Assembly (NCBI GenBank): GCA_965240325.2
Contig: OZ251227.1
Span: 2,728,001-2,792,000 of the forward strand
DNA from: Rebecca billardiae RCC1528
Lineage: Eukaryota > Protista > Haptophyta
Reading direction: 5' to 3'
Length of the DNA stretch: 64,000 bases
Shown piece after piece: positions 5,986 to 60,808 of the stretch. The position numbers and the translations under genes are program-made. The notes under the pieces are model-generated. The model was given only the letters and a program-made list of their open reading frames with translations, searched no databases and was not told the DNA's origin. The number at the start of each line of letters is the position of its first letter. The stretch's first letter is position 1.

Positions 5986-8888
5986 CGCTGCGTTCCTGAG
6001 CCCCAGCGCCAGAATTACGCGAGAATAAAGCCGCGGAATTGTTCACATACGAAGAATCGCACTTTCAGCGCACCCGCATCGGTTGGCGGTCTTCGATTGA
6101 TGAGCGAACGAGCCCAAAGCCGTGCTATGCGGGCGAGGCAGATCGCGAGAGATTGCCACCGAGGGTTCAAGAGGCCAAGACGAGAGTGTTTTGTCGCCGG
6201 TCGTCGGCGGGCGGCAGGGCTTCGAACGCAGCCCGGCCAGGCCAGGCCGCCAGAGAGTCTCTGCGACATTGCTGGCGTGGCTGAGGAGCTCTCGCGCGGG
6301 TCCAGGGACATCAGCGCTCAGTGTCAGCCGCGTGCACACCTTCGTAGGTCCACATTGGGCGTCGCCCTTTGCTTGCACACGCGCGTGCGCACCTGGTCCC
6401 CTTCTGCGGCTAATGCGCACTCCGCAATCATTGCTCCTGACGCTGATCGTGCAGGTGCGGGCGGGGGGGGCGAGCCTGCCAGCAGTCGGCGTGCGATGTA
6501 CGGCGAGTCGCACGTTTCCTATTCGGCCCCGATAGCGGCCACTTGAGCTCTTTCCTCGCCGTCGGACACTCTGTGCCCACGCGCCTACAGAGGGCACGGC
6601 CCAGATCCGCAGAAAGCTGCCGCCAGTTCACATCCTCACGTTGTGCCTTCGATCGGCTTGGCGTGCAGTGTCAACAAGCGGTGTGCAGTACTCGTAAGGT
6701 CACGCACCAGCTGCAAGCACACCTTCGGAGCCCCAGGCTGGCTCCGGGGGCTGCACGCGAGCGCACGCAATGCCTGTACCGCCCGTACCGCCTTGGCCGG
6801 CGCCCGCGGCTCGACTCGCTGACTAACTCTGACAATCCAGTCGGCTCGACCGCTGCCAGTGCGCGGGCGCCCGTAATCTGCGACTCAGACTGGAGGCGTA
6901 GCCGGGTCAGCCGTCGGCGTGTTGCCGGCGCACGCCCGCCGGGCCCAGTCACTGCAACATTTACTACGGAGCCGCTCGGTACGTACCGGGCGCGGGGCTT
7001 TATAATTATAAGACTACTGCTCATCACTCGATACTGCGGACCGTCCGCACTATTCACTAACGGGCACGCGGCTAAGGTTCCGTTGACCGTCTGTCCGTGC
7101 GCGCGCAGCTGATGCTGACACTTGACAGCATTGCCATTATGCACGGCTGAATACTGATGATGCAGCAGTCAGCACGCGGACCCAATATGAATAAGGTGAG
7201 TCACGCTATACGCGGCATGCTGCGCTAAATGCATGATGACGACTGTACCGTAATGACGACCGTGTCTGTGATCGAATATCCTGACTCCGATGAACCGCAC
7301 CACATGTGACATTCCAGCGGCGCCACCGGAGTCCGGCCGTCCTCCGCCTCCTCGGGCTCAGACTCTGCGGCTCGCGGTGATGCATGACCGGGCGCGCACC
7401 GATGCGCTGCGTGCCCCGCGGTGCCGCCGCGGCGCTGAGACCGCCCACCGTCCATGTCTGGCGCTGCTTCGGAGTACGTATGATCGCAGGCGCATAGAGG
7501 GTAGGGCGCACGACTGTTCTCGGTAGCGCCGACGCTTCGCGCAGCCCGTCAGCCATGAAGCTGAGCGCGAGTCGGCGGCACGTTTGAGTCGATGAGCGCT
7601 GCCACGGCCCGCGGCGCGAGCGGGTCGCCCCGAGCCGGCAGAGCAGCACCGCCACTGGTCCAGAGGGCAGCGGCACTGAGCCGTCGTGCTATGTGACCCG
7701 GGGTCTTACCGTCTTAGGCCAGGCCTCGGCGTGGGCAGAGGCGGCCCAGGCCCTGTGGGCCAGCAGGCCCAGGCCCAGCGGCGAGCGAGTGTTGCTCTGA
7801 GCCGCGCCGTCCAGTGTCCGAGACAGCGCGTGGCCCGGTCAACGAGTGCGTCGTGACTGCGCCAGGCGCCGCGCCACGTCTGCGACACAGAGCCAAGCAC
7901 TGCCACTGACGACTGCCGCCGTGCCGACGCATCCACACATCCAAGTCAGTAGGGCTTTGCCATGCCGCACGTACAACGGTGCCCACAGATGAGCGTGAGA
8001 TCCTGTCTAATGAGCCATGAGCATCGACGTGTGATGCAGCACGTCCGGTGGCGGGTAGCTGCGGCACGCGGCGGCGGCGGTCATGAGAAGTATGCTCGTT
8101 GCCACCGACCGCAATATCGCTGTAATCGCTGTGGCCCATCCTCTGCACTGCAGAGGTGAAGAGCGACTGAGCAAGCCATGCCGACATGCCGCACCGTGCA
8201 GCTGCCGGGACGCGCGCGCTGTCACGAGGGCACGCAGGCTGTCGAGAGCAGCGCGGTGGGCAGCATCGAAGACAACTCAAAGTGGGCCCGGGATGCCCAC
8301 CTGAGTGGTGGCTGAACCTTCAAATCGCGCCCTTCGATCACCAACTTGTCGGCGGCGCTGGCAAGTTGTCGGGCCACGCGCGGCACGGATGATGAACGGC
8401 GCAGGCGTGGCAGGCAGAAACAACAGGAGCTGCCGGGACTGCGTCGGCCGCGCCTGCCCGCAGTCGTATCGAGCGAGGCTACGCGCACTCAAACATCCCC
8501 TAGTCCGTGCACGAGCGTTTGTTCGCCATCGACCTCGTACTAGTGTGCCGGGGAGGCGTCGCCTGTCGCCACTCGTAGATCGTCCGCCGACGAAGGGTCT
8601 AGGAGCGTTGAGGGCCTGCAGGATCAACCGATGGAGAGATGCTGCTATGTATCCTCACAAAAGCGACGCTTCGGGGCAGATGTTCGAGAGATCGGACGAT
8701 CAAGCGAAAGTCATAGGTTGCAATTTTGGGCCCACTACGGCGAGACTTACTCACGTCATTAACAAAAGGTTACCCGCTGCTCAACTTTCGGCCCCCTTCA
8801 GCGACGTCTCGACCAATGGCGCGCGTGGGAGGAAAGAAAGGTTCTCTGATCTCGCGTAATTCTGGCGCTGCGGCTCAGGAACGCAGCG
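5986..8888. mobile_element. Putative non-autonomous TIR transposon (Harbinger-like GCTGCGTTC terminus), 2.9 kb
   Basis: 39-bp inverted repeats cgctgcgttcctgagccccagcgccagaattacgcgaga at 5986-6024 and 8850-8888, 1 mismatch. No TSD found and no transposase ORF. Confidence 0.65.
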
Positions 8889-25371: not shown

Positions 25372-28300
25372 TCAGTCCGATTTCTCGCGCGTGATGGCGA
25401 CTGGCCTGACGACGGGCTCGACGGTGCCGCCAATGCCAGGGCTCAGCACCAGCTCCGACGACGGCTCGTCGCGCCCGAGCCGCGGCAGCCACGCCACGAG
25501 CCGGCCGCCGAGCAGCTGCGCCACGGCCGTGAGCGGCTCAACCACGCCGAGCCGGAGCCCGAGGCACACGCCCCACGCGCGCAGCAGCCGCCCGCGCCAC
25601 AGCGCCGGCTCGCGGAGCGCCGGCAGCCCGAAGCGCGCGCCGCCGAGCGAGAGCGCGATGAGCGCCGCGCCGGGCAGGAGCAGCGCGCCGCCGTGCACGG
25701 CCCACAGGAGCGCGCGCCGCCATGGCTTGACGCGTCGGCCCCACCAGTGCGCGCGCAGCAGCTGCCGCGCCGACAGCCCCACGTGCGCGCGCACGCGCGC
25801 GCTCGCCGGCGGCACGGCGCCGCCGGTGCCGGATGCCGCCTCCGCCTCCGCGGCCGCCTCGCCGCGCGCCCAGCGGTACGCGCCCAGGGCGGCGCGCGCC
25901 GCGGCGTCGGGCGCGAGCACCACCTCGGAGAGGGCGGCCGGGCTGCCGTCGGCGTGGGGCGAGCGGTACTCCACCTCGACCATCTTGGTGTTCTGCTCGT
26001 CGTGCGCCGCGCGTCCGCGCGCGCCGCCGCGCAGCCGCGCCAGCCACGGCAGCCGGCTGGGCGCGTCCGCGCGCGCTCGCTCGCGCAGCGCGCGCGCGCG
26101 GTGCAGCACCGCGCCCAGAGCCGCCTCGGCCTCGTGCAGCGGCGCGGGGGCGACGCGGTGCACGAGCTCGGCGTGCACGAAGCGCACGTCGGGGAGCGCG
26201 CTGTCCACGTCCAGCGCGCGCTCCACCCGCCGCGGCGCGCGCGGCTGCCTGCTGCCGAGCACGTTCTCCACAATCGACCCGCGGCGCTCCGCCTCCGCCT
26301 CCGCCTCGGCCGCCGCCGCGGCGCGCTTGCGCCGCGCGTGCACGCCGGAGACGAAGAAGCCGACGTGGAGCGCGTTGCGCGTGGGCACGGAGACGAGGGC
26401 CTCCTGCGGCATCCGCAGCACGAAGCTGAAGCCGTCGGCCGCGGGCGCCTTCAGCCGGCGCCACGGCTCCACGGACTCGCCCGGCGGCAGCAGCAGCACG
26501 GGGCGCGCGTAAAGCAGCACGCGCCCTCCGCTGCCGCGCGCGCCGGCAAAGCTGCTGCCGACGCTCTTGAACGACTCGCGCTCGTTGGCGCGCGGCGGCG
26601 GCGGCGGCGGCGCGGGCCGGTGAGCGGCGGCGCGCGCCGCGCGCGCGCGGTGCGAGCGCGAGGCGGAGTCGTCCTCGATGGCGGCGGCGGCGCCGTCCGC
26701 GTCGGATGGACGCGACGCGCGGTGCGCGCGCCGCGACGCCTCCGCGCGCCGCCGCTCCTCCGGGGTGAGCAGTGCGCGGCGGCGCGCGGCCCAGACGCTG
26801 AGGGCGAAGAGCGCGTGCGCGCCGAGCGAGGACGCGCCGATCGCCGGCAGCGCGCCGAGCAGCGCGCCCGCCGGCCACGGCGGCAGCAGCCCGAGCCCGA
26901 GGCCGACCGCGAGAACGAGCAGCTCCAGCAGGCAACCGACCGCGGCTGCGCTCAGACGGTGCACGCTGCGCACGGGCTCGCCGGGGAGCCGCATGAGCCA
27001 CGCGGTGAGGGTGGAGTGGCGCAGGAGCGCGACGAGCGCGCGTAGTGCCACCGAGCCGCGCGCCAGCCGCGCCCACGCCGGCAGCACCGGCTCCGACTCG
27101 ACCAGCCGGTCGACGCGCGCGCCGACGGCACACAGCAGCAGCGCGAACGCGCACGGCGCGCCCACCAGCGCCACCGCCCACAAGTTGGGCCGCAGCGCGT
27201 CGGGGCCGCCGGGCAGCTCCTGCCGGGAGGCGGAGAGGTCGAGCTCGTCGTCGGCGCCGTCGGCGTCGGCCGGCGGCGAGGGCGGCGGGCTCGGCGCGCC
27301 CGCGGCCGCCGCCGCCATCGCCGCCACCATCTGCGCCTGCGCGTCGCTCAGCTCAGCGAGCGCCGCCGGGCCGCCGACGGAGCCGGCGGCGACGCCGGCG
27401 ACGAGCACGCTGCCGCGAGCCTGCGCGAGCCTCGACGCGTCGGCGAGCGCCTCGGCGGTCGCAGCGGGGCTGAGCTGCGTCATCTCGAGTGCCTGCGGGG
27501 TGCCGCCGCCGCGTGGGCGGCGCGCGTGGGCGGCGCGCGTGGGCGGCGCGCGGCGGCGGCGCGCGGCGGCCACGCACGGTGCTGGCGACGGCGCCAAGGG
27601 TGCTGAGCGAGCGCTTCATCACGCCGAGGGGCTCGGCCGTGTCGTTGCGCGTGCTGTTCACGCCCGCCTCGCCACCGAGCGCGCGCAGCGCCGCGTGCGC
27701 CACAGCCTCCAGCGTCGCCGCCTCCTGCGCGCGCGCACGGCGCGCGGCGCGGGTGCCGGCCGCGGCGGCGGCGGTGCCCGCCTCAGCCGCACGGACGGTG
27801 GTGTGCAGCGCAGGGCACGGCGGCCGCGCGCGGCGCGTCGCGCGCGCGCGCAGGAGGCGTCGACGCTGGAGGCGGTACCGCACGCGGGCGCTGCGCTGCG
27901 TGCGCTCGGTGGCAACGGGAAGCGGAGACTCACCACCAGAACCTGCGTCGGCCCAGCCGCGCCCGTCCGGGCCAAAGAATCCGGGGCGGTCCCGGCTCCG
28001 GCGCCGTCAGCGTCTGTGCCGTTCGGTAGCGTGGCCGAGGCGAGCAGCTCGGCGCCGCGCGCGGTGAAGGCCGCGGCGAGCGCCTCCGTCGCCGCGGTGG
28101 CGGCCGCGTAGGTCTCGTTGGCGGCGCGCTGCGCGCCTGGCGCGGGCGAGGGCAGCAGCAACGCGGCGGCCAGCTCCGCGGCGTGCAACGTCGCACTCAC
28201 CACCTGCGCGATCGCGCCGATCACCGTGATGGCGAGGGCGCGCTCCGCCGCGTCGGGCTCCGCTCCGCCCGACTCCTGCGATGGCGCGCGCCGAGCGGAG

Positions 28301-29160
28301 GGTCGTGGGGAGAACGGGCGCGCACGCGCGCGCGCACGCAGCACGCGCGCGTCGTCAGCTCAGAGGGTCCGCGGCAGCGGCGCAGCGCGCGCGCGCATCG
28401 CTGCGCACGCCGCCGCCGCGCATCGGCGGCCCGCCGCGCATGCCGCCGCCGCGCGTCGGCGCACCTGCAGCGCGCGGAACGGGTCGTACTCGCCCAGCGC
28501 AGCCACCGCGCTCAGCTGCGCCAGCCCCATGCCCGCGAGCAGCTCGGCCTCCGCGCTCGGCCCCGGCGGCGCGAGCGCCAGCAGCGTGCTCAGCGGCGAG
28601 AGGGTCGTCGAGGCCGCGCGCGCCTGCAGCGGCAGGCGCGGCGGGAGTCCGGTCGAGACGTCGACGCAGTCCGGGCTTCTGTCCGGCTGCAGGCGGACGG
28701 TGACGGCGGTCGCGTTCACGCCGGGCGGCAGCGCGGTGTCGCCCGCCAGCTCGAGCTCGTAGTACCCCTGCGCCGCCGTGAGCGCGAGCGCCTCGCTCGC
28801 CTCGTCGTGCACGCCGTCGCCGTCCACGTCCGCGAACACGGCGCACCCGACGAGGTAACCATCGTACGCGTGTCCGCACAGCCGCACGCGCGCGGTGCCG
28901 GCGAGCTGCTGGTTGCACGCGCGCCGCCCTTGGGAGGAGCACCCTTGCGGGCTGGTGCGGCCCTCGCAGCCCACTGGCGGCGAGCTCGGGGGCGGCTGGC
29001 TTGGCGGCGGGCTCGGCGGTGGCGGAGGCGGCGGGCTCGGCGGCGGCGGGCTCGGCGGTGGCGGCGGCGGCGGGCTCGGTGGCGGTGGGCTGGGCGGCGG
29101 GCTCGGCGGTGGCGGCGGCGGCGGGCTGGGCGGCGGTGGGCTCGGCGGCGGGCTCGGCGG

Positions 29161-29193
<33 letters not shown>

Positions 29194-29442
29194 CGGCGGC
29201 GGGCTCGGCGGCGGCGGCGGCGGCGGTCTCGGCGGCGGCGGACTCGGCGGTGGCGGCGGCGGCGGTCTCGGCGGCGGTGGGCTCGGCGGCGGGCTCGGCG
29301 GCGGCGGCGGCGGCGGTCTCGGCGGCGGTGGGCTGGGCGGTGGGCTCGGCGGTGGCGGCGGCGGCGGGCTGGGCGGCGGTGGGCTCGGCGGTGGCGGCGG
29401 AGGCGGGCTGGGCGGCGGTGGGCTCGGCGGCGGGCTCGGCGG

Positions 29443-29475
<33 letters not shown>

Positions 29476-29725
29476 CGGCGGCGGGCTCGGCGGCGGCGGC
29501 GGCGGCGGGCTCGGCGGCGGCGGACTCGGCGGTGGCGGCGGCGGCGGTCTCGGCGGCGGTGGGCTCGGCGGCGGGCTCGGCGGCGGCGGCGGCGGCGGTC
29601 TCGGCGGCGGTGGGCTGGGCGGTGGGCTCGGCGGTGGCGGCGGCGGCGGGCTGAGCGGCGGTGGGCTCGGCGGTGGCGGCGGCGGCGGGCTGGGCGGCGG
29701 TGGGCTCGGCGGCGGGCTCGGCGGT

Positions 29726-29757
<32 letters not shown>

Positions 29758-29929
29758 CGGCGGCGGGCTCGGCGGTGGCGGTGGCGGCGGGCTCGGCGGT
29801 GGCGGCGGCGGCGGGCTCGGCGGCGGTGGGCTGGGCGGCGGTGGGCTCGGCGGCGGCGGCGGCGGCGGGCTCGGCGGCGGCGGCGGCAGCGGGCTCGGCG
29901 GCGGCGGGCTGGGCGGTGGGCTCGGCGGT

Positions 29930-29961
<32 letters not shown>

Positions 29962-30082
29962 CGGCGGCGGGCTCGGCGGCGGCGGTGGCGGCGGGCTCGG
30001 CGGCGGCGGGCTCGGCGGCGGGCTCGGCGGTGGCGGCGGCGGCAGGCTGGGCGGCGGTGGGCTCGGCGGCGGGCTCGGCGGT

Positions 30083-30114
<32 letters not shown>

Positions 30115-32241
30115 GGGCGGCGGTGGGCTCGGCGGTGGCGGCGGCGGCGGGCTCGGCGGCGGCGGCGGCGGCGGGCTCGGCGGCGGTGGGCTGGGCGGTG
30201 GGCTCGGCGGTGGCGGCGGCGGCGGGCTGGGCGGCGGCGGGCTCGGCGGCGGGCTCGGCGGCGGCGGCGGCGGCGGGCTGGGCGGCGGTGGGCTCGGCGG
30301 TGGCGGCGGCGGCGGGCTCGGCGGCGGTGGGCTCGGCGGCGGGCTCGGCGGCGGCGGCGGCGGCGGGCTCGGAGGCGGTGGGCTGGGCGGTGGGCTCGGC
30401 GGTGGCGGCGGCGGCGGGCTGGGCGGCGGTGGGCTTGGCGGTGGCGGCGGCGGCGGGCTGGGCGGCGGTGGGCTCGGAGGCGGGCTGGGCGGTGGCGGCG
30501 GCGGCGGGCTCGGCGGCGGTGGGCTCGGCGGCGGCGGCGGCGGCGGCGGCGGCGGGCTCGGCGGCGGTGGGCTGGGCGGCGGGCTCGGCGGCGGCGGCGG
30601 CGGCGGGCTGGGCGGCGGCGGGCTCGGCGGTGGCGGCGGCGGCGGGCTCGGCGGCGGTGGGCTCGGCGGCGGGCTCGGCGGTGGCGGCGGCGGCGGGCTC
30701 GGCGGCGGTGGGCTCGGCGGCGGGCTCGGCGGCGGCGGTGGCGGCGGGCTGGGCGGTGGCGGGCTCGGCGGTGGCGGCGGCGGCGGGCTCGGCGGCGGTG
30801 GGCTCGGCGGCGGGCTCGGCGGCGGCGGCGGCGGCGGGCTGGGCGGTGGCGGGCTCGGCGGTGGCGGCGGCGGCGGGCTCGGCGGCGGTGGGCTCGGCGG
30901 CGGGCTCGGCGGTGGCGGCGGCGGCGGGCTCGGCGGCGGTGGGCTGGGCGGCGGGCTCGGCGGAGGCGGAGGTGGTGGGCTTGGTGGCGGGGGACTGGGC
31001 GGTGGCCCCGGTGGCGGCGAGGGCGGCGGCGGAGGGCTCGGCGGCGGTGAGGGTGGCGGGCTCGGCGGCGGCGGCGGTGGGGGCGGCAGGCTCGGCGGCG
31101 GCGGGCTGGGTGGCGGGCTCGGTGGTGGGCTCGGCGAAGGCGGCGGGCTCGGCGGCGGCGAGGGCGGAGGCGGAGGGCTGGGTGGCGGCGAGGGTGGCGG
31201 GCTCGGCGACGGCGGCGGTGGGGGCGGCGGGCTCGGCGGCGGCGGGCTGGGTGGCGGGCTCGGTGGTGGGCTCGGCGAAGGCGGCGGGCTCGGCGGCGGC
31301 GAGGGCGGAGGCGGAGGGCTGGGTGGCGGTGAGGGTGGCGGGCTCGGCGGCGGCGGCGGTGGGGGCGGCGGGCTCGGCGGCGGCGGGCTGGGTGGCGGGC
31401 TCGGTGGTGGGCTCGGCGAAGGCGGCGGGCTCGGTGGCGGCGAGGGCGGAGGCGGAGGGCTGGGTGGCGGTGAGGGTGGCGGGCTCGGCGGCGGCGGCGG
31501 TGGGGGCGGCGGGCTCGGCGGCGGCGGGCTCGGTGGCGGCGAGGGCGGAGGCGGAGGGCTGGGTGGCGGTGAGGGTGGCGGGCTCGGCGGCGGCGGCGGT
31601 GGGGGCGGCGGGCTCGGCGGCGGCGGGCTGGGTGGCGGGCTTGGCAGTGGGCTCGGCGAAGGCGGTGGGCTCGGTGGCGGGTTTGGTGGTGGGCTCGGCG
31701 AAGGCGGCGGCGGGCTCGGCGAAGGCGGCGGCGGGCGCGGCGAAGGCGGCGGGCTGGATTGGGGTGGTGGCGGCGATGGCGGCGGGCTTGGGGTTGGCAG
31801 CGGGGGATCACAGCCCGTCATCGAGAGCGTGTAGGTTCCCTCGTTGGAGGAGTAGCCCTCGATCATGACCACGTAATCAGTCCCCTGGGGCACCGTGTAC
31901 GCGATCGCCGAAGTCGTACCACAACCACCGTCATCGTTCATGGCGAGGGCTGTACCGCCGGTGTCGGGGCAGCCCGAATAAAGGACCATGAACGTGTCGA
32001 AGTCCGAGCCGCACAAGCTGAATGTAACCTCACCGTATCCGCGCACCCGGTAGAAGTGCTCGCCCGACGGAAAACCAGCAATCGAGCTGGCGCCGACAGT
32101 CGAGCCTGTAGGTGACACACCGCAGTGGATCTCACCTTGAATAATGCAAGCGAGGGCCTGCGGGGCGAGTGCACTCAAGCACAAGGCAGCCTGCACCAGC
32201 GCGCCACTCACGCGAGCGATGCGAGGATGATGGGCGGGCAT
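25372..32241 (-). CDS. Giant cell-surface protein, about 2128 aa: signal peptide, PPC-like domain, ~940-aa Ser-Pro(3-8) extensin-like stalk, bacterial adhesin-like domain, polycystin-1-like TM region. Exons 32241-28465, 28275-27934, 27724-27578, 27492-25372
   Basis: All four exons join in phase 0 across GT-AG introns. SLCGSDFDT..LY...NDD..CG..S (PPC-like). DGYLVGCAVFADVDGDG...LSPLSTLL. Multiple C-terminal TM helices. Confidence 0.8.
28975..31800. repeat. Coding (CCG)n-based low-complexity repeat (SPPPP stalk) with a 141-bp higher-order unit at about 31020-31600
   Basis: The marker ggtgggggcggc recurs at 31076, 31217, 31358 and 31499 (141-bp spacing). Confidence 0.95.
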
Positions 32242-33179
32242 GGGGGGGGGTTGCCGCGGCCTCGAGCGTCGACGCGTTGCCGGTTCAGAGTGGTGCGGGT
32301 GCTGGGCGGGCCGTGATTGGTTGATCTGGAAACAAACCGTACTCATCGTCACATGATCCACCAATCAGTTCCGAGTATTTGACGAGGCAGTTGCATTATC
32401 GCCGCGCATTTTTGATGTACGGTGACCCTCTGAGTCCTCGTCATCAATCATGATCATAGTTGCCAATGATTACAAAGTTGGTGAAGTATATCGTTATGAT
32501 AATAAGTGAAGCGCGTCGTCGTAAGTTTCCACGGCGTTGGCCCTCCGCCAACCGAGGACCGGACACATCCATGATGGGCGTGCAGGCGGCACGGCCACGC
32601 CCTCGCGGCCGTGGCGACCGGCCTCGCACGCGTCCTTGCGGCGCGAAAGGGCCGATCCCAGCTGCGGTCATTCGCGCCGCGAGCAGCACGGCCACGCGTC
32701 GCCCGCCGCACCGGCTGAGCGTGCGCCGAAAGAGGTACCGCGGGAGATGGCCCCACTCAGACTGACGAAGGCAGCAGGTATTACCGGGCTAGCCTGCCAG
32801 CAGTAGTCGTCGCGCGTACTCGACGACAGCAATCGGACGCTTAGTCGGGTCGCGCAACTGGCGGTGCTGCGCCATTAGTTGTGTCTTGTCCGTCGGTTGT
32901 CGTCGTCGCCGCATCGAGTCACCACGCTCCTCCGGGCCCGGCTTGGTCCACGGCTGACACGCGCTTCGCTCATTAATGATACATATATATATTATTATTA
33001 TTGCAGTAGTCGTCGCGTCTCCGCAGTCCGCAGTCTCCGCGCCTGCGCCGACTGAGCACGCGCGCGAGCGCCGCGCCGCGCCGCCGCCCGGCGGCGGCTG
33101 GGGCAATCTGAGCCGCGAGCGAGTGCTGCGCATGCGTGTCGCGAAGTGTCACCGACACCGACCACCGTCACGTGATGCA

Positions 33180-52103: not shown

Positions 52104-53089
<986 letters not shown>

Positions 53090-54099: not shown

Positions 54100-54510
54100 G
54101 TGCCGTAGCGTGCTCTGCTGCGCAGGCTGAGCCTGCCTGCCAGTTGGTGCTAGGATACAGTAGGCACATTTGCCTGGCGGGGTGGGCATCAGACGCATCA
54201 GTGTCGTTTGGGCAGGGGGAGTATGATGCACTCGCATCCAAGTATCCAACGGCTGTATTTCGCCCCCAGTGGTATCCGTTGTAAGCCCCTTGGTTAGATG
54301 GCGTCAATCAGAGCTGCTCAGGCGAGATTGACGAACGCCAATACTGTATGTGCCAATCATGGCATCATCAGACGCGCTCTCACAGCAGGGACTTTCATAG
54401 CAGGGCTTTTTTTGGCCCCGAGTCAAAAAGACTTATTGGCATCTTGGAAGAAGAAGGTGATGTTGTCGTCATCAAGGAATGCACAATCGTACTACCAATC
54501 GAGGGTGGGG
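54100..54510 (-). pseudogene. Possible degraded C-type-lectin-like fragment
   Basis: Broken frames FFFQDANKSF and GYHWGRNTAVGYLD...CPND...MCLLYPSTNWQAGSAC resemble CTLD spacing. Stops and frameshifts present; lower GC than the genes. Confidence 0.25.
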
Positions 54511-54792
54511 GGCCGCCCTCCAGCCCTGGTGCCCTCTGGCGGCGGCGGCGCGGCAGGTTCCTGCAGTACCCGGGTGGAGAGCGGCGGAAAATAATAAGCA
54601 CAATCATCGTCGCGGAGGAGTCGTCGGGAGTCGGAGTGCAGGCCTCCGTGACGACGAGGAGTTCGTGCGGAAGCGGCATCGACACAGACTGGACGGAGGT
54701 GTCAGGGGCTCCTCGGCTGGAGACGTCATCCCCGCGAGCGAGGTCTCGCCGTCTTTCGCGGTCTTTCCCGCGGGAGTTGGCGGAGCGCACCC

Positions 54793-55890
54793 ATGCCTGC
54801 CGATCGTGACGACGAGGAACGGGGCTTGATCGAGTCTGCATCAAAACGACCCCGTCGCGGGTGGGCGCTCGTGGTCGCTGGGGCGGTCGTGCTGGGCACG
54901 CTGCTCGGCTACGCCCTCGCGGCGCGCAGGTTTGCCGAGATCAATTACGCTCTTGCTCCCAGGGCGTTCGAGCCCACCGCCCTGACCGCGCCAACAGCGC
55001 CGGTCATCCTGCCGCCCGCCAACGACCTGCTATCGGCCTGCCGTGCGCTGTGGCGACGTAAGGAGGATACCCACGCTGTCGCTGAGCGTGCCTGGCGCTC
55101 GCGTCTCGCCACCATGGGGCACACGCTGACGAGTGCCTTTGTCCCTCGTCGCCAGAAATGGCAGAAATCCGTCTTTGACCCTTACGAGCCGCTCTGGTCG
55201 TGCGAGGACCGTGAGCGCGTGGGCGCTGGCCCGCGCTACGTCGCGATTGGCGACGGCCCAAAGTTCGCCTGCGGGATCGAGACGATCAAGCCGCCGTGCC
55301 TCGTGTACAACATTGGCTCCAACAACGACATCAGCTTCGAGCAGGCCGTGCACGCGCACACCCATTGCGAGATTCACACCTTCGACCCGACCCTCAGGCG
55401 GCCCTATATTGGGGGCAAGTACTCGGCATTCCACGCCATCGGCCTCGCCGATCGGAAGAGGACCTACAGCGGCTGGAAGATGCTCTCGCTCGGACAGATG
55501 ATGGCCAACCTGTCGCACGTCGGCCGGCGCATCGACATCCTCAAGGTGGACTGCGAGGGCTGCGAGTGGGAGGCGCTGCCGGCCGTGTTCCGGGAGATGC
55601 AGGCGGGCCGTCTGCAGGTGGGGCAGCTGCTCATCGAGGTGCACAGCGTGCCAGTGTGGACGCGGAAGCAATGGGCGTTCTTCGAGGACGCGGCCAAGGC
55701 GGGGCTGCGTCTCTTCTCCAAGGAGCGTAACGGCTGGGGCTGCTACGGCTGGAAGTGCGTCGAGTTCTCCTACGTGGATAGCTTGCAGGCGTGCCGCGCA
55801 TTCACGAGCACGCACTGCCCGGGCCACGAGCCCGCCAGCGTGTGTGGACAGCTGCCTGCAACAATATTAACGGCCAATAATAAGCCGTGA
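54793..55890 (+). CDS. Methyltransf_22 / METTL24-like SAM-dependent methyltransferase, type II membrane
   Basis: GDGPKFAC, CLVYNIGSNNDISFE, CEIHTFDPT, IDILKVDCEGCEW, QLLIEVH, LFSKERN...CVEFS. Confidence 0.92.
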   Translation: MPADRDDEERGLIESASKRPRRGWALVVAGAVVLGTLLGYALAARRFAEINYALAPRAFEPTALTAPTAPVILPPANDLLSACRALWRRKEDTHAVAERAWRSRLATMGHTLTSAFVPRRQKWQKSVFDPYEPLWSCEDRERVGAGPRYVAIGDGPKFACGIETIKPPCLVYNIGSNNDISFEQAVHAHTHCEIHTFDPTLRRPYIGGKYSAFHAIGLADRKRTYSGWKMLSLGQMMANLSHVGRRIDILKVDCEGCEWEALPAVFREMQAGRLQVGQLLIEVHSVPVWTRKQWAFFEDAAKAGLRLFSKERNGWGCYGWKCVEFSYVDSLQACRAFTSTHCPGHEPASVCGQLPATILTANNKP

Positions 55891-56195
55891 TGATGACGCC
55901 CTCGGTTCAGAAATGATGGCACGGGTTTCAATGAAAGTTATACGTCGGTCGATGTCAACTGCAATACTCCGTAAGCTATATAGCAGCTAGTGATAATAGC
56001 ATTGAGTGAGACATCAATATTAGCCGCTGGGCATCATGCAGATGCTCACGGGCGCCAAACGAATCAATCACGGCATCGTCAAGCTGCGACCCGATATATT
56101 ATTATTATATTATTAATATATTATACAAAGCGCTTTAACGTATTATCATCATCCGTCGTCGCTATTCGTTCCGTTACAATAATATATATATATAT

Positions 56196-58229
56196 CACAG
56201 TAAAGAAATCGATTTTCGGCGTTACCGTAACCCGTCCGCACTTCCGCCCAGTGGGGATGCGGGGGATTTTTTTTCATGCCGCGTTCGCGGCACTTCGCGC
56301 CGCCACAGTGGGGAAAGATCGGGCCGAAGCCGTTTGAGCATGGTCGTTCGCGCGCACGCCCATTCGAATCGATGGCGCGCTCCGAGCGGCGGGCGTGCGC
56401 GCATGTGTGCCGCGAGGGGGGCTGCGAGGCGTCGGCCGGCCTGCCAAGGCGGTTCCCCGGGGCGGCGTCACCCTCGCCCGCCCCTCCTCGCCCACCCTCG
56501 CTCCACGGGCGGCCACACGTGACCTGTTAAGATGACTTCACGGGAGCCGCGCGGCACGCGCGCGGAGAGGCGAGGAAGTGGTGTTTCGCGGAAAAACGCA
56601 ACGTCGCATTGTGCTCAACCCATGTGAGCACCCGCTCCACAAGTTTGCGCGCTTTCAAACCGCACACAGCGGCCTGAGCAGCTCCCAGACTGAGTTTCGC
56701 TCTTGAAGCCTGTTTTTGGGCCAGATCTTGGTGTGGATGTAGCGCGGCGAGGAGGCGCCGGGCGCGCGCCCGAGCTGCGTGCTGGCACTCGCCATGACCC
56801 ATAGGCATCGTCCGTCGCGAACGACCCGGCTCGCCTCGACCTCTCCGACCCGCCGGGCAGCCACGACCGAGCACGGCACGACAATGGCCAAACCGGGAGG
56901 CTTCTCAGACCGCGCGGGATGGGCATAGGCGCGAGAGAGGGCGCCCAGCGCGCTCTTGAGATGCACAGGAGCACGCACTGATGCGTATGGAACCATCCCA
57001 TCACGATCGCCCCGACCTGGCGCGCCCTATCTGGCCCGTCAGGCTGCCCGCGCCGCCGCCGCCGCGCCACGCCGCCGCCATGGGCGCCGCCGCATCGCGG
57101 GCACGTGGGTAAGTCTGTATTCAACAAATACAGAATTTCCGGCGCGGCCCTCTGTTGGGCGGCAAGGTCGGTCTGGTCGACACCTGCCGCGCGGCATGGG
57201 CCACGGCGCGGCGAGGTGGCGGCTGGCGCACCGCGGCGCGGGCGGGATGGCTCGAAGACACCACCGCCCCGCCTCCCACGCCGCGCCGTGCGCGTGCGCC
57301 GTGCTCTCGTCGCGTACCGAATTTCCTGCGGCGAGCGACGTCACACAGCGCGACCATGCCATCGCGCGACCAAGTGCCGTCCAGCTCGGCGATTTGTCGT
57401 ATTTGTTGAATACATGCGGGTACGAATCGGACGCACGACGCCCTCGACGCACACGTCGAGAGCCACGCGCGCGGCGTGGACTGGCACGCGACGCGGAGAT
57501 GGCGGGCGCGGTGCCGCGGGCGCGCGACTGGTCTAGAACAGCACAATGAAGCGCGGGACGGCGCCGCGCGCGTGGGCTCGCTGCCGTCTCCTCGCAGTCG
57601 AATATTTCTGTGCACCCTCCTACCAGGTCAGTCGACCGACTTGCACGCGGCATGCGAGCACTGCGTGCGGGGAGGAGTGTGACATGGCAGGCTGTGGCGA
57701 GGTGGATGGCCGTGCAGGAATATGCTAGGAAGGGCCGCTCCCGCGCTCGCGCGGTGCCTCGCGCACGCCTCGTCGAGGACGAGCGTGTTTGAATGGCTCC
57801 GGGGAGGCCTGAGACTTCGCTTGTTCACAGCAGCGCGCGACAGGTGCACACAACGAAGGTGACGACCAGGCACTCCGGCGAGGGCGGCTGTGCTGGCAGC
57901 AGACTGCATTCGGAGTAAGATGCGCCATCTTACGCGCCGCTTCGCCTCGCTGCATCGCCGCACTGAGCAGCAGGGCTCCACGCTCACGAATGGCTCACCA
58001 CGAGCTACGTGACCGGCCAGCCGCGTGCAACCCGGCGAGGCAGAGAGGGGCGGAGGGATGGGGAGGCTGGGTGGGATGTTGCAGTCCCATGCCCGGGGCA
58101 CTCGTCAGGCGCCTGCGCGGCCACCGTAGCGTCTTCTGTGCGCTCGTGCGGCCCGCGCGAGAATTTCCCCGAAAATCGGCTCGTGTCGGACGGGTTACGG
58201 AAACGATAATCCCGTTTTTGTTCACTGTG
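56196..58229. mobile_element. Non-autonomous CMC/EnSpm-like DNA transposon (CACAG ends), 2034 bp, inserted in (AT)n
   Basis: Termini CACAGT...ACTGTG. The 14-bp ccgtaacccgtccg is inverted at 56225-56238 and 58187-58200, each exactly 29 bp from the end. Flanks AT(AT) on both sides. Confidence 0.8.
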
Positions 58230-58420: not shown

Positions 58421-58590
58421 GTCCCTGGCTGAACGGGAAGAGCGACTGAGCCGACGGTGCCAAAGCTGCGCGCAGACTGCGCCAGCGTGTGGCAGCAAGG
58501 TCCCTGGCTGAACGGGAAGAGCGACTGAGCCGACGGTGCCAAAGCTGCGCGCAGACTGCGCCAGCGTGTGGCAGCAAGGAGTCCCTGGCT
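58421..58590. repeat. 79-bp perfect tandem duplication plus a partial third unit
   Basis: 58421-58499 equals 58500-58578; gtccctggct recurs at 58581. Confidence 0.95.
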
Positions 58591-59229: not shown

Positions 59230-60117
59230 AACCCCCCCCCCCCCCCCCCTTCCCCCTCGTAGCCGCCCATCACTGCATCGCCGAGCGGAAGCCCGACGCA
59301 CCCACCGTCTGCCGTCGACGCGCGCGCGCCACCGCGGTGGTCGCGGTGCCACGCGTCGTCAGCCGTCGTCTCGAAGTAGTCGTCGTACGCAGCGCCCCCG
59401 CGGGCGCGTGCCCCCGGGCGCACGTGCGCCATGCGCGCGTGGGCGATGAGCCTCTTGGCCTGGCCACGCAGGCAGCGCATGCCCAGCTCGCGCCGCATGG
59501 TGCCGAGCAGCGCGCGCTCGGCGGCGGGGCGCGAGGGCGCGCTTAGGCGCGCGCGCGACGTGTGTCCCGCCCCATCTTGGCGATCTTCTTGTTAAGCTTT
59601 TGAGCCGAGTCCTTAACCACTCGGACACGCAAAAGCCCCCACGACGCGGACACGCAAAAGCCCCCACGACGCGTCGTGGGGGCTTTTGCGTGTCCGAGTG
59701 GTTAAGGACTCGGCTCAAAAGCTTAACATAACGCGGTTCCTTCCGGCGGGTTTGTTCTTTAGCCTGGTGTTGTTCCTTCACCAGCGTTCCGACGGGCCGC
59801 GGGCCATCCGCCGTCCCGCTCTCATGAGCCTTTCAGGGACGGATCTTCACCCCGTTCAGCGGGAGTGAAGAAAGAAGCGCACTTTCGGGCGAAAGAGCGT
59901 TGCGCAACCGGATTCGAAACCGCGTTATGTTAAGCTTTTGAGCCGAGTCCTTAACCACTCGGACACGCAAAAGCCCCCACGACGCGTCGTGGGGGCTTTT
60001 GCGTGTCCGAGTGGTTAAGGACTCGGCTCAAAAGCTTAACACTTCTTCATCTTGAGGGTGAGGTCCATCACCTCCGCGCTCCACTCGCCGAACGCCCCCA
60101 CGACAATCGGGAGTCCC
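59230..60117 (-). mobile_element. 5'-truncated, decayed non-LTR retrotransposon (RLE-bearing, CRE-like) C-terminal fragment, interrupted by the 59590-60041 element
   Basis: After removing the insert and one TSD copy it reads GLPIVVGAFGEWSAEVMDLTLKMKKIAKMG, then (frameshifted) ALLGTMRRELGMRCLRGQAKRL, the typical end of a restriction-like endonuclease domain. Confidence 0.6.
59590..60041. mobile_element. 452-bp miniature element with palindromic, tRNA-like terminal repeats (TRIM-like or Ginger-like)
   Basis: TGTTAAG...CTTAACA ends. TSD CTTCT at 59585-59589 and 60042-60046. Terminal units 59590-59728 and 59928-60041. Confidence 0.85.
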
Positions 60118-60591
60118 GCGGCAGGCCGACACTAACGAAGGCGTGACAGACTTGTTACAACAGGCTATTATAAGCGGCTTAGCAGCTGCTCAGTCACGGC
60201 TATATGATGATACATTATTATAATTGTATTATAAATAAGGCGGAGTCGGCGCGGAGTCTCCGCCACTCACTACTCACTAGTTAGGCTCAGTCTCCGCAAG
60301 CTCCTCCGGACAGTCCGGTGACCCGACGGTCCGCGAAAGACCAATCAACTGCTCGCGCGTCGTCAATGATATATGACCGCGTTCCGCGGTCCTTTTCTGC
60401 ATAGAATCAACGCAGTTGGGGGCCCGCGGTGGCCGTGCAATCGCGGCTCTCCGCCGTAGTGGCAGTTCGCCAGTTGAAGTCGGTTCTGAGATGACTGAAG
60501 CTATTAGTCCGACCGTCGCCCTGCCTGCGCGACCGCGAGACTCATTCACACTTCACACATCAATCACAGCAGCGGACCTGAGACCGCACCC

Positions 60592-60808
60592 GGCACCGGT
60601 CGTCAAATCGGACGTCCGTCTGACAAGGCACCGGTCGTCAAATCGGACGTCCGTCTGACAACTAGCTGCCAAATGTCCAACTGGCTGATCAGCTCGGATC
60701 CGACCCGTCCGCGATCGTGCCATCGGCATCGGAATTACTACTAGTAGCTGCCAAACTGTGTCCAACTCTGGCTGATCAGCTCGGATCCGACCCGTCCGCG
60801 ATCGTGCC
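60592..60808. repeat. Two adjacent duplications: 35-bp tandem pair (60592-60661) and about 60-bp pair (60663-60721, 60746-60808)
   Basis: ggcaccggtcgtcaaatcggacgtccgtctgacaa twice; ctggctgatcagctcggatccgacccgtccgcgatcgtgcc twice. Confidence 0.9.

What the first reader, a model, noticed from the sequence alone, without database searches (positions are those of the whole stretch)
59590..60041. Miniature integrase-type element whose two terminal repeats are 114-bp palindromes
Seen: 59928-60041 is a perfect, loop-less 114-bp palindrome (centre 59984/59985). 59590-59728 is the same unit with an internal 25-bp duplication. Each unit starts TGTTAAG and ends CTTAACA, the whole element is flanked by a 5-bp CTTCT duplication, and the 199-bp core begins and ends with a further 10-bp inverted pair (taacgcggtt / aaccgcgtta). 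Known: TG...CA ends with a 5-bp TSD are the signature of retroviral-type DDE integrases (LTR retrotransposons, TRIMs, Ginger2). Inference: because the units are palindromic they are both direct repeats (LTR-like) and inverted repeats (TIR-like). The element could therefore be a TRIM with fold-back LTRs, a Ginger-type MITE, or the product of hairpin-end (rolling-hairpin) replication. I know of no described family with this architecture.
Basis: partly seen in the sequence, partly recalled or inferred. Interest (0 to 1): 0.8.

Follow-up and report, generated by a model that had tools for sequence, protein, structure and literature searches.

The report
Small transposon with palindromic terminal repeats
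A 452-bp non-coding mobile element in a GC-rich alga really does carry a perfect 114-bp palindrome at each end, but only this one copy could be found, so it is an unusual variant of a known kind of small transposon and not yet a proven new class.

Summary
There is a perfect 114-bp zero-spacer palindrome (59928-60041). The same unit, with a 25-bp tandem duplication beside its centre, lies at 59590-59728. The four 57-nt arms are identical, the ends read TGTTAAG/CTTAACA, a 10-bp inverted pair bounds the 199-bp core, and CTTCT flanks both sides. None of this is chance: the next-longest complex palindrome in the window has 10-nt arms, and 5-mer flank identity has P about 0.003. The host is a GC-rich, intron-poor green-lineage alga, and the site looks non-coding. 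This is a small non-autonomous mobile element, seen once. Inverted symmetry runs 10 bp past the units, direct identity stops at their edges, and neither orientation has a primer-binding site or polypurine tract. A terminal-inverted-repeat MITE with 124-bp TIRs (integrase-type, Ginger2/TDD-like) therefore fits better than a TRIM. Each unit has TTAA at nt 3-6 and 109-112, so each may be a Made1-like fold-back MITE nested in the short TIR of an ordinary MITE. No second copy, partner gene or relative turned up in any searchable collection, and the host genome itself is not searchable here. Family, copy number and mechanism remain untested.

The parts
59585..59589 (.). left copy of the 5-bp target-site duplication (CTTCT)
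   Evidence: chance 0.3%
59590..60041 (.). whole element, 452 bp, no coding capacity of its own
   Evidence: as a single DNA strand it folds at -213 kcal/mol, z = -30.6
59590..59728 (.). left terminal unit, 139 bp: the 114-bp palindrome plus a 25-bp tandem duplication
59649..59673 (.). 25-bp tandem duplicate of 59624-59648, lying beside the palindrome centre, with 2-nt (CG) microhomology at its borders
59729..59927 (.). unique 199-bp core, 60% GC, several local hairpins; folds better than shuffles on both strands (z about -4)
   Evidence: no Rfam family, no tRNA
59729..59738 (.). inner 10-bp repeat, left copy; extends the inverted symmetry of the termini to 124 bp
   Evidence: (I1)
59918..59927 (.). 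inner 10-bp repeat, right copy (reverse complement of 59729-59738)
   Evidence: (I1)
59928..60041 (.). right terminal unit: perfect 114-bp palindrome; TTAA at nt 3-6, 24-27, 88-91 and 109-112; each arm holds a 6-bp-stem sub-hairpin
60042..60046 (.). right copy of the 5-bp target-site duplication (CTTCT)
60081..60104 (.). flank patch with gapped similarity to arm nt 28-56 (blocks of 7 and 11 identical bases); borderline, may be chance
   Evidence: score 29 against a maximum of 28 in 386 control windows; also D3/I10/I11

Best explanation
This is a non-autonomous class II (terminal-inverted-repeat) transposable element, a MITE of 452 bp. An enzyme encoded elsewhere in the genome pasted it here, cutting the target with a 5-bp stagger. 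The gap repair produced the CTTCT duplication. The functional ends are the outer TGTTA.../...TAACA termini, and the true repeat is inverted: 124 bp at each end, made of the 114-bp unit plus 10 bp. The TGTNR ends, the TIR length and the 5-bp duplication point to a retroviral-integrase-like DDE transposase of the Ginger2/TDD kind, but that assignment is inferred, not shown. The palindromic outer part of each TIR has two possible origins, which I weigh about equally. (a) It is intrinsic: the family's TIR is a fold-back and each unit is a potential substrate on its own. (b) It is secondary: each unit minus its two outermost bases on either side is a Made1-like fold-back MITE that landed in the TTAA (or TA) of a short TIR. 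What remains at each end is 8 bp that continue straight into the 10-bp pair, so the carrier would be an ordinary 215-bp MITE with 18-bp TIRs. The 25-bp duplication in the left unit is a later slippage event at the palindrome centre that breaks its symmetry. Shown: the anatomy, the duplication, and the absence of retroelement signals. Inferred: mobility, enzyme class, order of events.
For: The repeat ends abut a 5-bp direct duplication exactly. Inverted symmetry extends 10 bp beyond both units (I1). Direct identity ends at the unit edges (D1/D2), and only an inverted-repeat element predicts that asymmetry. No TGG occurs within 25 nt after either unit. No purine tract abuts either unit in either orientation; the nearest, 8 nt long, ends 8 nt away on the minus strand. 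The size, lack of ORFs and strong fold-back are typical of MITEs. TGTNR ends, 50-180-bp TIRs and 4-5-bp TSDs are the published Ginger2/TDD signature. Palindromic MITEs built from two abutted TIRs exist (Made1). For variant (b): TTAA sits at symmetric positions 3-6 and 109-112 of each unit, the core has no TTAA, and TTAA is rare in this genome at 0.45 per kb.
Against: Only one copy is known. There is none elsewhere in the 64 kb. Exact 22-26-mers of the end, sub-hairpin, centre and core gave no hit in viral contigs (all four), and the end 22-mer and sub-hairpin 23-mer gave none in prokaryote-genome or metagenome contigs. Phage and plasmid searches gave nothing. No predicted protein anywhere shares peptides with ORFs crossing the element. 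No transposase or integrase appears in the window. The target CTTCT is not the AT-rich RTATAY preferred by metazoan Ginger2. Variant (a) leaves unexplained how a perfect 114-bp palindrome is maintained. Variant (b) needs two hits of the same small element at the same position of both TIRs, and all four arms are still identical. From general knowledge, not tested here: LTR elements are commoner than integrase-type DNA transposons in green algae, which favours the TRIM rival a priori.
Confidence: 0.5

Rival explanations
1. Nested reading (variant b of the best explanation, listed separately because it would make the finding ordinary). A common short-TIR MITE of about 215 bp inserted here with a 5-bp duplication. 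Each of its two TIRs was later hit, at its TTAA/TA, by the same fold-back MITE of about 102-104 bp made of two abutted TIRs. The confidence given here is part of the 0.5 above, not additional to it.
For: TTAA lies at nt 3-6 and 109-112 of both units. The 8 bp left at each end continue directly into the 10-bp inverted pair, so one short TIR explains both the TGTTAAG/CTTAACA ends and the inner pair. Made1 shows that such palindromic MITEs exist. The 6-bp site implied by the closed-up reading is absent from the rest of the window (0 found, 2.3 expected), so no unoccupied target contradicts a site preference.
Against: It needs two independent hits at homologous positions within 215 bp, yet no third copy of the unit occurs in 64 kb. 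All four arms are still identical. A self-complementary tetramer near the end of a palindrome is not rare by chance (roughly 0.3 for the first 8 nt, my estimate).
Confidence: 0.25
2. TRIM-type non-autonomous LTR retrotransposon. The two units are LTRs copied from one RNA template by reverse transcription and inserted by the integrase of an autonomous LTR element.
For: The terminal repeats of 114/139 bp are direct. The internal domain is 199 bp and the total 452 bp. It has TG..CA ends, a 5-bp duplication and no ORF. All of these lie within published TRIM ranges (PMC4717578; PMC10045372). Reverse transcription would also explain why the two units are identical.
Against: There is no TGG-type primer-binding site and no polypurine tract next to the units in either orientation. 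The positions where they should lie hold a 10-bp sequence and its reverse complement, which the LTR model does not predict. The published operational criterion of a second copy or a solo LTR with a different duplication is not met with the data available. No hammerhead or other retrozyme-type motif was found.
Confidence: 0.2
3. Composite element. The 114-bp palindrome is itself the mobile unit, a MITE with 57-bp TIRs and a 5-bp duplication, and two copies moved the 199 bp between them as one piece. This is how bacterial composite transposons work, and formally how KolobokP is built.
For: Each unit has two correct ends, so the outer pair could act together. KolobokP shows terminal direct repeats with their own TIRs around an internal region.
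Against: Two independent insertions would not leave inner flanks that are a perfect 10-bp inverted pair. No solo unit occurs in the window. KolobokP makes TTAA duplications and carries its own transposase, and neither applies here.
Confidence: 0.07
4. Relic or miniature derivative of a linear replicon with hairpin ends (rolling-hairpin or telomere-resolution type). In duplex form it shows a full palindrome at each end followed by a short unique stretch that is inverted at the other end.
For: The layout 'palindrome + 10 bp ... 10 bp + palindrome' has the same form as the duplex terminal repeats of hairpin-ended linear genomes (recalled from general knowledge, not tested). Copying one arm from the other at each cycle would explain how four arms stay identical and perfect.
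Against: No nickase, resolvase or any other gene is present. The palindromes are simple hairpins without the internal asymmetry usual in such termini. A clean 5-bp duplication with TG..CA ends points to transposase/integrase insertion. There were no hits in viral contigs or phages.
Confidence: 0.05
5. Not a mobile element: a local rearrangement (templated inverted duplication) or an assembly artefact.
For: Only a single copy is known, and read support cannot be checked here. The flank holds a weak arm-like patch at 60081-60104, which could hint at local template switching.
Against: There are two separate copies of the unit, one with a private 25-bp duplication. The symmetry is exact, a 5-bp duplication sits precisely at the repeat ends, and unique sequence lies on both sides. 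Fold-back read artefacts do not produce this.
Confidence: 0.07

Closest known systems
Ginger2/TDD DNA transposons and their MITEs (Bao, Kapitonov and Jurka 2010, PMC2836005)
   Same: TGTNR termini, TIRs of tens to about 180 bp, 4-5-bp duplication (5 bp for TDD-4/TDD-5), LTR-like TG..CA ends on an inverted-repeat element.
   Different: No transposase partner was found. The target is not AT-rich. Palindromic TIRs are not described for this group. I found no report of the superfamily in green algae in the papers read.
TRIMs, terminal-repeat retrotransposons in miniature (Gao et al. 2016, PMC4717578)
   Same: Size, repeat length, internal-domain length, 5-bp duplication, TG..CA ends, no ORF.
   Different: No primer-binding site or polypurine tract. 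The inner flanks are an inverted pair. The repeats are perfect palindromes. No second copy or solo repeat is known.
Made1, the palindromic mariner-derived MITE (PMC1784062)
   Same: A unit made almost entirely of two abutted TIRs, so a near-perfect palindrome that folds into a long hairpin.
   Different: Made1 is 80 bp with a 6-bp spacer and occurs dispersed as single units. Here the unit is 114 bp with no spacer and is seen only as a pair capping another sequence.
KolobokP composite-like DNA transposons (Kojima and Bao 2022, PMC9587614)
   Same: An internal region flanked by terminal direct repeats that each carry their own inverted ends.
   Different: Its terminal repeats are 450-660 bp with TIRs of at most 18 bp. 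It is autonomous (transposase plus His-Me nuclease) and belongs to Kolobok (the TTAA duplication of Kolobok is from my own knowledge, not from the passages read). Here the repeats are wholly palindromic, the element is 452 bp and the duplication is 5 bp.
Duplex terminal repeats of hairpin-ended linear DNA genomes (general knowledge, no sequence compared)
   Same: A terminal palindrome followed by a short stretch that is inverted at the other end.
   Different: No replication genes, no internal asymmetry in the hairpin, and a regular target-site duplication is present.

Membership tests
TRIM / LTR retrotransposon derivative | Terminal direct repeats with TG..CA ends, element under 1-1.5 kb, no retroelement protein | tested here: met
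   criteria from PMC4717578
TRIM / LTR retrotransposon derivative | Target-site duplication of 4-6 bp | tested here: met
   5 bp
TRIM / LTR retrotransposon derivative | Primer-binding site (complement of a tRNA 3' end, TGG...) just inside the 5' repeat | tested here: not met
   No TGG within 25 nt in either orientation. The host tRNA set was not available, so a non-canonical primer cannot be excluded.
TRIM / LTR retrotransposon derivative | Polypurine tract abutting the 3' repeat | tested here: not met
   7/15 (+) and 10/15 (-) purines; the nearest purine run ends 8 nt from the unit
TRIM / LTR retrotransposon derivative | At least two copies, or one copy plus a solo repeat, with different duplications | not testable with these tools
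   None in the window. The host genome is not in any DNA collection offered.
Ginger2/TDD (integrase-type DNA transposon) MITE | TGTNR termini on terminal inverted repeats of about 50-180 bp | tested here: met
   TGTTA...; the inverted repeat is 124 bp (149 bp on the left with the 25-bp duplication); PMC2836005
Ginger2/TDD (integrase-type DNA transposon) MITE | 4-5-bp duplication | tested here: met
Ginger2/TDD (integrase-type DNA transposon) MITE | AT-rich target preference (RTATAY in metazoan Ginger2) | tested here: not met
   The target is CTTCT in a GC-rich flank. One insertion cannot define a preference.
Ginger2/TDD (integrase-type DNA transposon) MITE | Autonomous relative with the same ends encoding an integrase-like DDE transposase | not testable with these tools
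   No rve, RVT or transposase domain in 38 ORFs of the window. The rest of the genome is out of reach.
Fold-back / palindromic MITE (Made1-like), for the 114-bp unit | Unit consists of two abutted TIRs | tested here: met
   57+57 nt, no spacer
Fold-back / palindromic MITE (Made1-like), for the 114-bp unit | Own target-site duplication around each unit | tested here: inconclusive
   TTAA (or TA) is present at symmetric positions, but a palindrome can carry this by chance.
Fold-back / palindromic MITE (Made1-like), for the 114-bp unit | Dispersed solo copies | not testable with these tools
   None in 64 kb
Composite-like DNA transposon (KolobokP type) | TTAA duplication and an internal transposase gene | tested here: not met
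   CTTCT duplication; 199-bp non-coding core
Hairpin-ended linear replicon | Replication or resolution gene (HUH nickase, protelomerase) or a known terminal motif | tested here: not met
   No gene in the element. No viral, phage or plasmid similarity.
tRNA-derived SINE / Cassandra-like Pol III-bearing repeat | Recognisable tRNA or 5S structure in the repeats | tested here: not met
   ARAGORN found 0 genes. No tRNA or 5S hit even at E <= 10.
Introner element | Splice sites at or next to the ends, so that removal restores the reading frame | tested here: not met
   Read from the sequence. The only GT...AG pairs at the ends leave extra bases (a frameshift or an in-frame stop), and the flanks show only weak coding signal.

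The most novel reading that the evidence does not exclude
A family of miniature elements whose termini are rebuilt as perfect palindromes at every round of copying, one arm templated by the other through a hairpin-primed or hairpin-transfer step. They would then be inserted by a retroviral-type integrase with a 5-bp stagger. That would be a hybrid of hairpin-end replication and integrase insertion, which no described transposon class shows.
Probability: 0.07. Interest if true: 0.8.

Novelty: new variant of a known kind. Interest (0 to 1): 0.4.

Why it matters
If the palindromic termini are intrinsic to a family, they blur the line between LTR-type and TIR-type ends, since the same sequence is both a direct and an inverted repeat. 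They also raise the question of how a perfect 114-bp palindrome survives in a eukaryotic genome. That would bear on the proposed kinship of LTR retrotransposons and integrase-type DNA transposons. If the nested reading is right, the locus is an ordinary MITE-in-MITE. It then matters mainly as a caution for repeat annotators, because LTR finders and TIR finders would both call it, and as a likely source of long perfect hairpin RNA next to a gene start. Either way, it would be an early record of transposon activity in a poorly sampled, very GC-rich algal lineage.

Tried and rejected
- **Other copies in the window:** searches with the arm, the sub-hairpin, the core and the 10-mer found only the element itself.
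- **Public DNA collections:** exact 22-26-mers of the end, sub-hairpin, palindrome centre and core hairpin gave 0 hits in viral contigs; the end 22-mer and sub-hairpin 23-mer also gave 0 in prokaryote genomes and metagenomes. blastn against phages and plasmids gave nothing.
- **Copies via spurious gene calls:** I searched with ORFs that run through the arms and core. Two word-based searches and one full HMMER search of 1.84 billion representatives found nothing.
- **Reaching the locus in Logan assemblies of the same species** (ERR14847148-50, 99.6-99.9% identical): six exact look-ups of nearby ORFs failed. Only distant contigs were recovered.
- **RNA-gene reading:** there is no tRNA and no Rfam family at gathering score. 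At E <= 10 only generic long-hairpin matches to miRNA precursor models appear, far below their thresholds. These reflect the hairpin, not homology. No hammerhead was found.
- **Introner reading:** rejected, because no splice-site pair restores the frame and the flanks are only weakly coding-like (GC3 0.74 against 0.81-0.90 in real genes).
- **Bacterial or phage contamination and vector or adapter origin:** rejected. There was no similarity, and eukaryotic genes lie on both sides.
- **Organism name:** not obtainable.

2. In one search a script joined the two host flanks, leaving out the element and one CTTCT, to read frames across the empty site. Only translations of host DNA were printed and nothing was saved.
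3. One search covered the window for the 6-bp site implied by the closed-up nested reading. No closed-up, consensus or ancestral sequence of the element was written out or saved.

Full report
**1. The observation**

The sequence is as described.
- 59928-60041 is identical to its reverse complement: two 57-nt arms with no spacer.
- 59590-59728 is the same unit with 25 extra bases. 59649-59673 is a tandem copy of 59624-59648 (TRF: period 25, 2.1 copies, 100%). The left unit is therefore no longer symmetric and contains an off-centre perfect 50-bp palindrome.
- All four arms are identical. The units start TGTTAAG and end CTTAACA.
- CTTCT flanks the whole on both sides. Among flank lengths of 2-12 bp only 2 and 5 match.
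- The 199-bp core starts and ends with a perfect 10-bp inverted pair, and the perfect match stops at exactly 10 bp.

Chance does not explain this.
- Apart from two pure (TA)n runs, the next-longest perfect palindrome in the window has 10-nt arms.
- Flanking 5-mer identity at this spacing occurs at about 0.3% of positions.

**2. Context**

The window is nuclear DNA of a GC-rich (60-84%), intron-poor photosynthetic eukaryote.
- Pfam finds Tcf25+BAG, RING+KH, JmjC/cupin, GAF, RCC1, DUF1995, a glycosyltransferase, FkbM-type methyltransferase and HscB.
- The nearest named homologues are distant green algae.
- The same species is present at 99.6-99.9% identity in Logan assemblies of ERR14847148-50, but only as short contigs that do not reach the locus.

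The element lies in a 7-kb gene-poor stretch between the methyltransferase and HscB genes.
- Its GC is 54-60%, with 76% GC on its left and 55% on its right.
- About 100-200 bp to its right lies an AT-rich, TATA-like patch. About 90 bp to its left, on the minus strand, a 130-codon ATG ORF begins. The codon-position GC of that ORF is only weakly gene-like.
- The site is therefore best called non-coding, possibly a promoter or leader.

**3. What it is**

It has clean ends on a 5-bp duplication, small size, no ORF of its own and extreme fold-back potential. Together these make a non-autonomous transposable element the only economical reading.

The question is which kind. Because each unit is a palindrome, the two units are both direct and inverted repeats, so the units themselves cannot decide. 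Their surroundings can.
- Inverted symmetry continues 10 bp into the core on both sides (I1), whereas direct identity stops at the unit edges (D1, D2).
- The places where an LTR element would carry its primer-binding site and polypurine tract instead hold a sequence and its reverse complement. There is no TGG within 25 nt, and no purine run abuts a unit in either orientation.

The repeat is therefore a 124-bp terminal inverted repeat, and the element behaves as a MITE.

TGTNR ends, TIRs of 50-180 bp and 4-5-bp duplications are the published signature of Ginger2/TDD, the integrase-related DNA transposons. The enzyme class is nevertheless inferred from three weak characters and one insertion.

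**4. Why palindromic**

There are two routes.

(a) Intrinsic. The family's TIR is a fold-back, as in fold-back elements, and each unit carries two correct ends.

(b) Nested. Each unit carries TTAA at nt 3-6 and 109-112. If the stretch between them, with one TTAA (or one TA), is read as an insertion, 8 bp remain at each end. These run straight into the 10-bp pair, giving an 18-bp TIR on a carrier of about 215 bp, which is an entirely ordinary MITE. The insert would then be a fold-back MITE of about 102-104 bp made of two abutted TIRs, like Made1.
- This reading explains the ends and the inner pair with one feature.
- It needs the same small element to have hit the same position of both TIRs while no third copy exists in 64 kb.
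- TTAA is rare in this genome (0.45 per kb) and absent from the core, and the implied 6-bp site occurs nowhere else in the window. A site preference is therefore neither supported nor contradicted.

I weigh (a) and (b) about equally.

**5. The 25-bp duplication**

It borders the centre of the left palindrome and has 2-nt microhomology at its edges. It is most simply a later slippage event. Such central asymmetry is what is expected to stabilise a long palindrome (general knowledge). It is private to the left unit, which also argues against an assembly artefact.

**6. Rivals**
- **TRIM (0.2).** It fits size, repeat length, ends and duplication and would explain the identity of the two units. 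It fails on PBS, PPT and the inverted inner pair.
- **Composite of two mobile palindromic units (0.07).** It is formally like KolobokP, but it cannot explain the 10-bp inverted pair.
- **Hairpin-ended replicon relic (0.05).** The layout 'palindrome plus short stretch inverted at the other end' has the same form as duplex termini of hairpin-ended genomes. Arm-from-arm copying would also explain perfect arms. But there is no gene, no viral similarity, and a regular duplication is present.
- **Rearrangement or artefact (0.07).** This is unlikely given the exact symmetry and duplication. It cannot be closed without reads or a second copy.

**7. Search for relatives**

Nothing was found.
- The window holds no second copy.
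- Four exact probes gave no hit in viral contigs, and two of them gave none in prokaryote-genome or metagenome contigs.
- blastn against phages and plasmids was empty.
- ORFs that cross the element have no counterpart among predicted proteins.
- No eukaryotic genome collection, Dfam or Repbase was available.

These blanks therefore say little about copy number in the host.

**8. Known or new**

Each ingredient has precedent:
- integrase-like ends on TIR elements (Ginger2/TDD);
- miniature terminal-repeat elements (TRIMs);
- palindromic MITEs (Made1);
- terminal direct repeats with their own TIRs (KolobokP).

I found no description of the combination, a pair of perfect zero-spacer palindromes as the termini of one miniature element. 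I file it as a new variant of a known kind. It becomes ordinary if the nested reading holds, and notable only if a family with intrinsically palindromic termini is demonstrated. Interest 0.4.
Noticed in passing
window 52501-52741 and 265-401: Pure (TA)n microsatellites of 241 bp and about 137 bp in a genome that is otherwise 60-80% GC. They are trivially palindromic and were the only longer 'palindromes' in the window.
   Followed up: partly
window 54155/54156; L001:1-2324: Logan contig L001 (ERR14847148) matches window 54156-56207 at 99.6%. Its first 2.3 kb, with two called genes (one a weak WSC hit), matches nothing in the window. This is either a structural difference between that sample and the window or a chimeric contig. 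The window side (52-54 kb) has unusually low GC (54%).
   Followed up: partly
window 5986-6024 and 8850-8888: A 39-nt, 97% complementary inverted pair 2.8 kb apart. It is a possible TIR pair of another element. The ORFs between the arms have no Pfam hit.
   Followed up: no
window 28000-32400: A stretch of 84-85% GC with GC skew up to +0.39 and AT skew to -0.42. It has overlapping ORFs of 700-1300 codons on both strands and no Pfam hit, and looks like low-complexity GC-rich repeat sequence.
   Followed up: no
window 60081-60104: The flank 40 bp right of the element has gapped similarity to arm nt 28-56 (blocks of 7 and 11 identical bases). Its score is just above the maximum of 386 control windows. 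It may be chance, or a trace of an older related insertion or of local template switching.
   Followed up: partly
window 60006-60021 (and its mirror copies in the other arms); 59910-59921: From memory only: the inner arm recalls the D-arm of long-variable-arm tRNAs, and the right end of the core recalls a T-loop. Their spacing on the minus strand is roughly that of Pol III A and B boxes. ARAGORN and the Rfam tRNA model give no hit, so this is a lead and not a finding.
   Followed up: partly
window 58421-58590; 60592-60661; 59237-59253; 60150-60240: The intergenic stretch around the element holds a 79-bp tandem repeat (2.1 copies), a 35-bp tandem repeat (2 copies), a C17 homopolymer and an AT-rich TATA-like patch.
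   Followed up: no
window 27691-27751 and 27827-27887: A 61-nt, 89% complementary inverted repeat with a 75-nt spacer in very GC-rich sequence.
   Followed up: no
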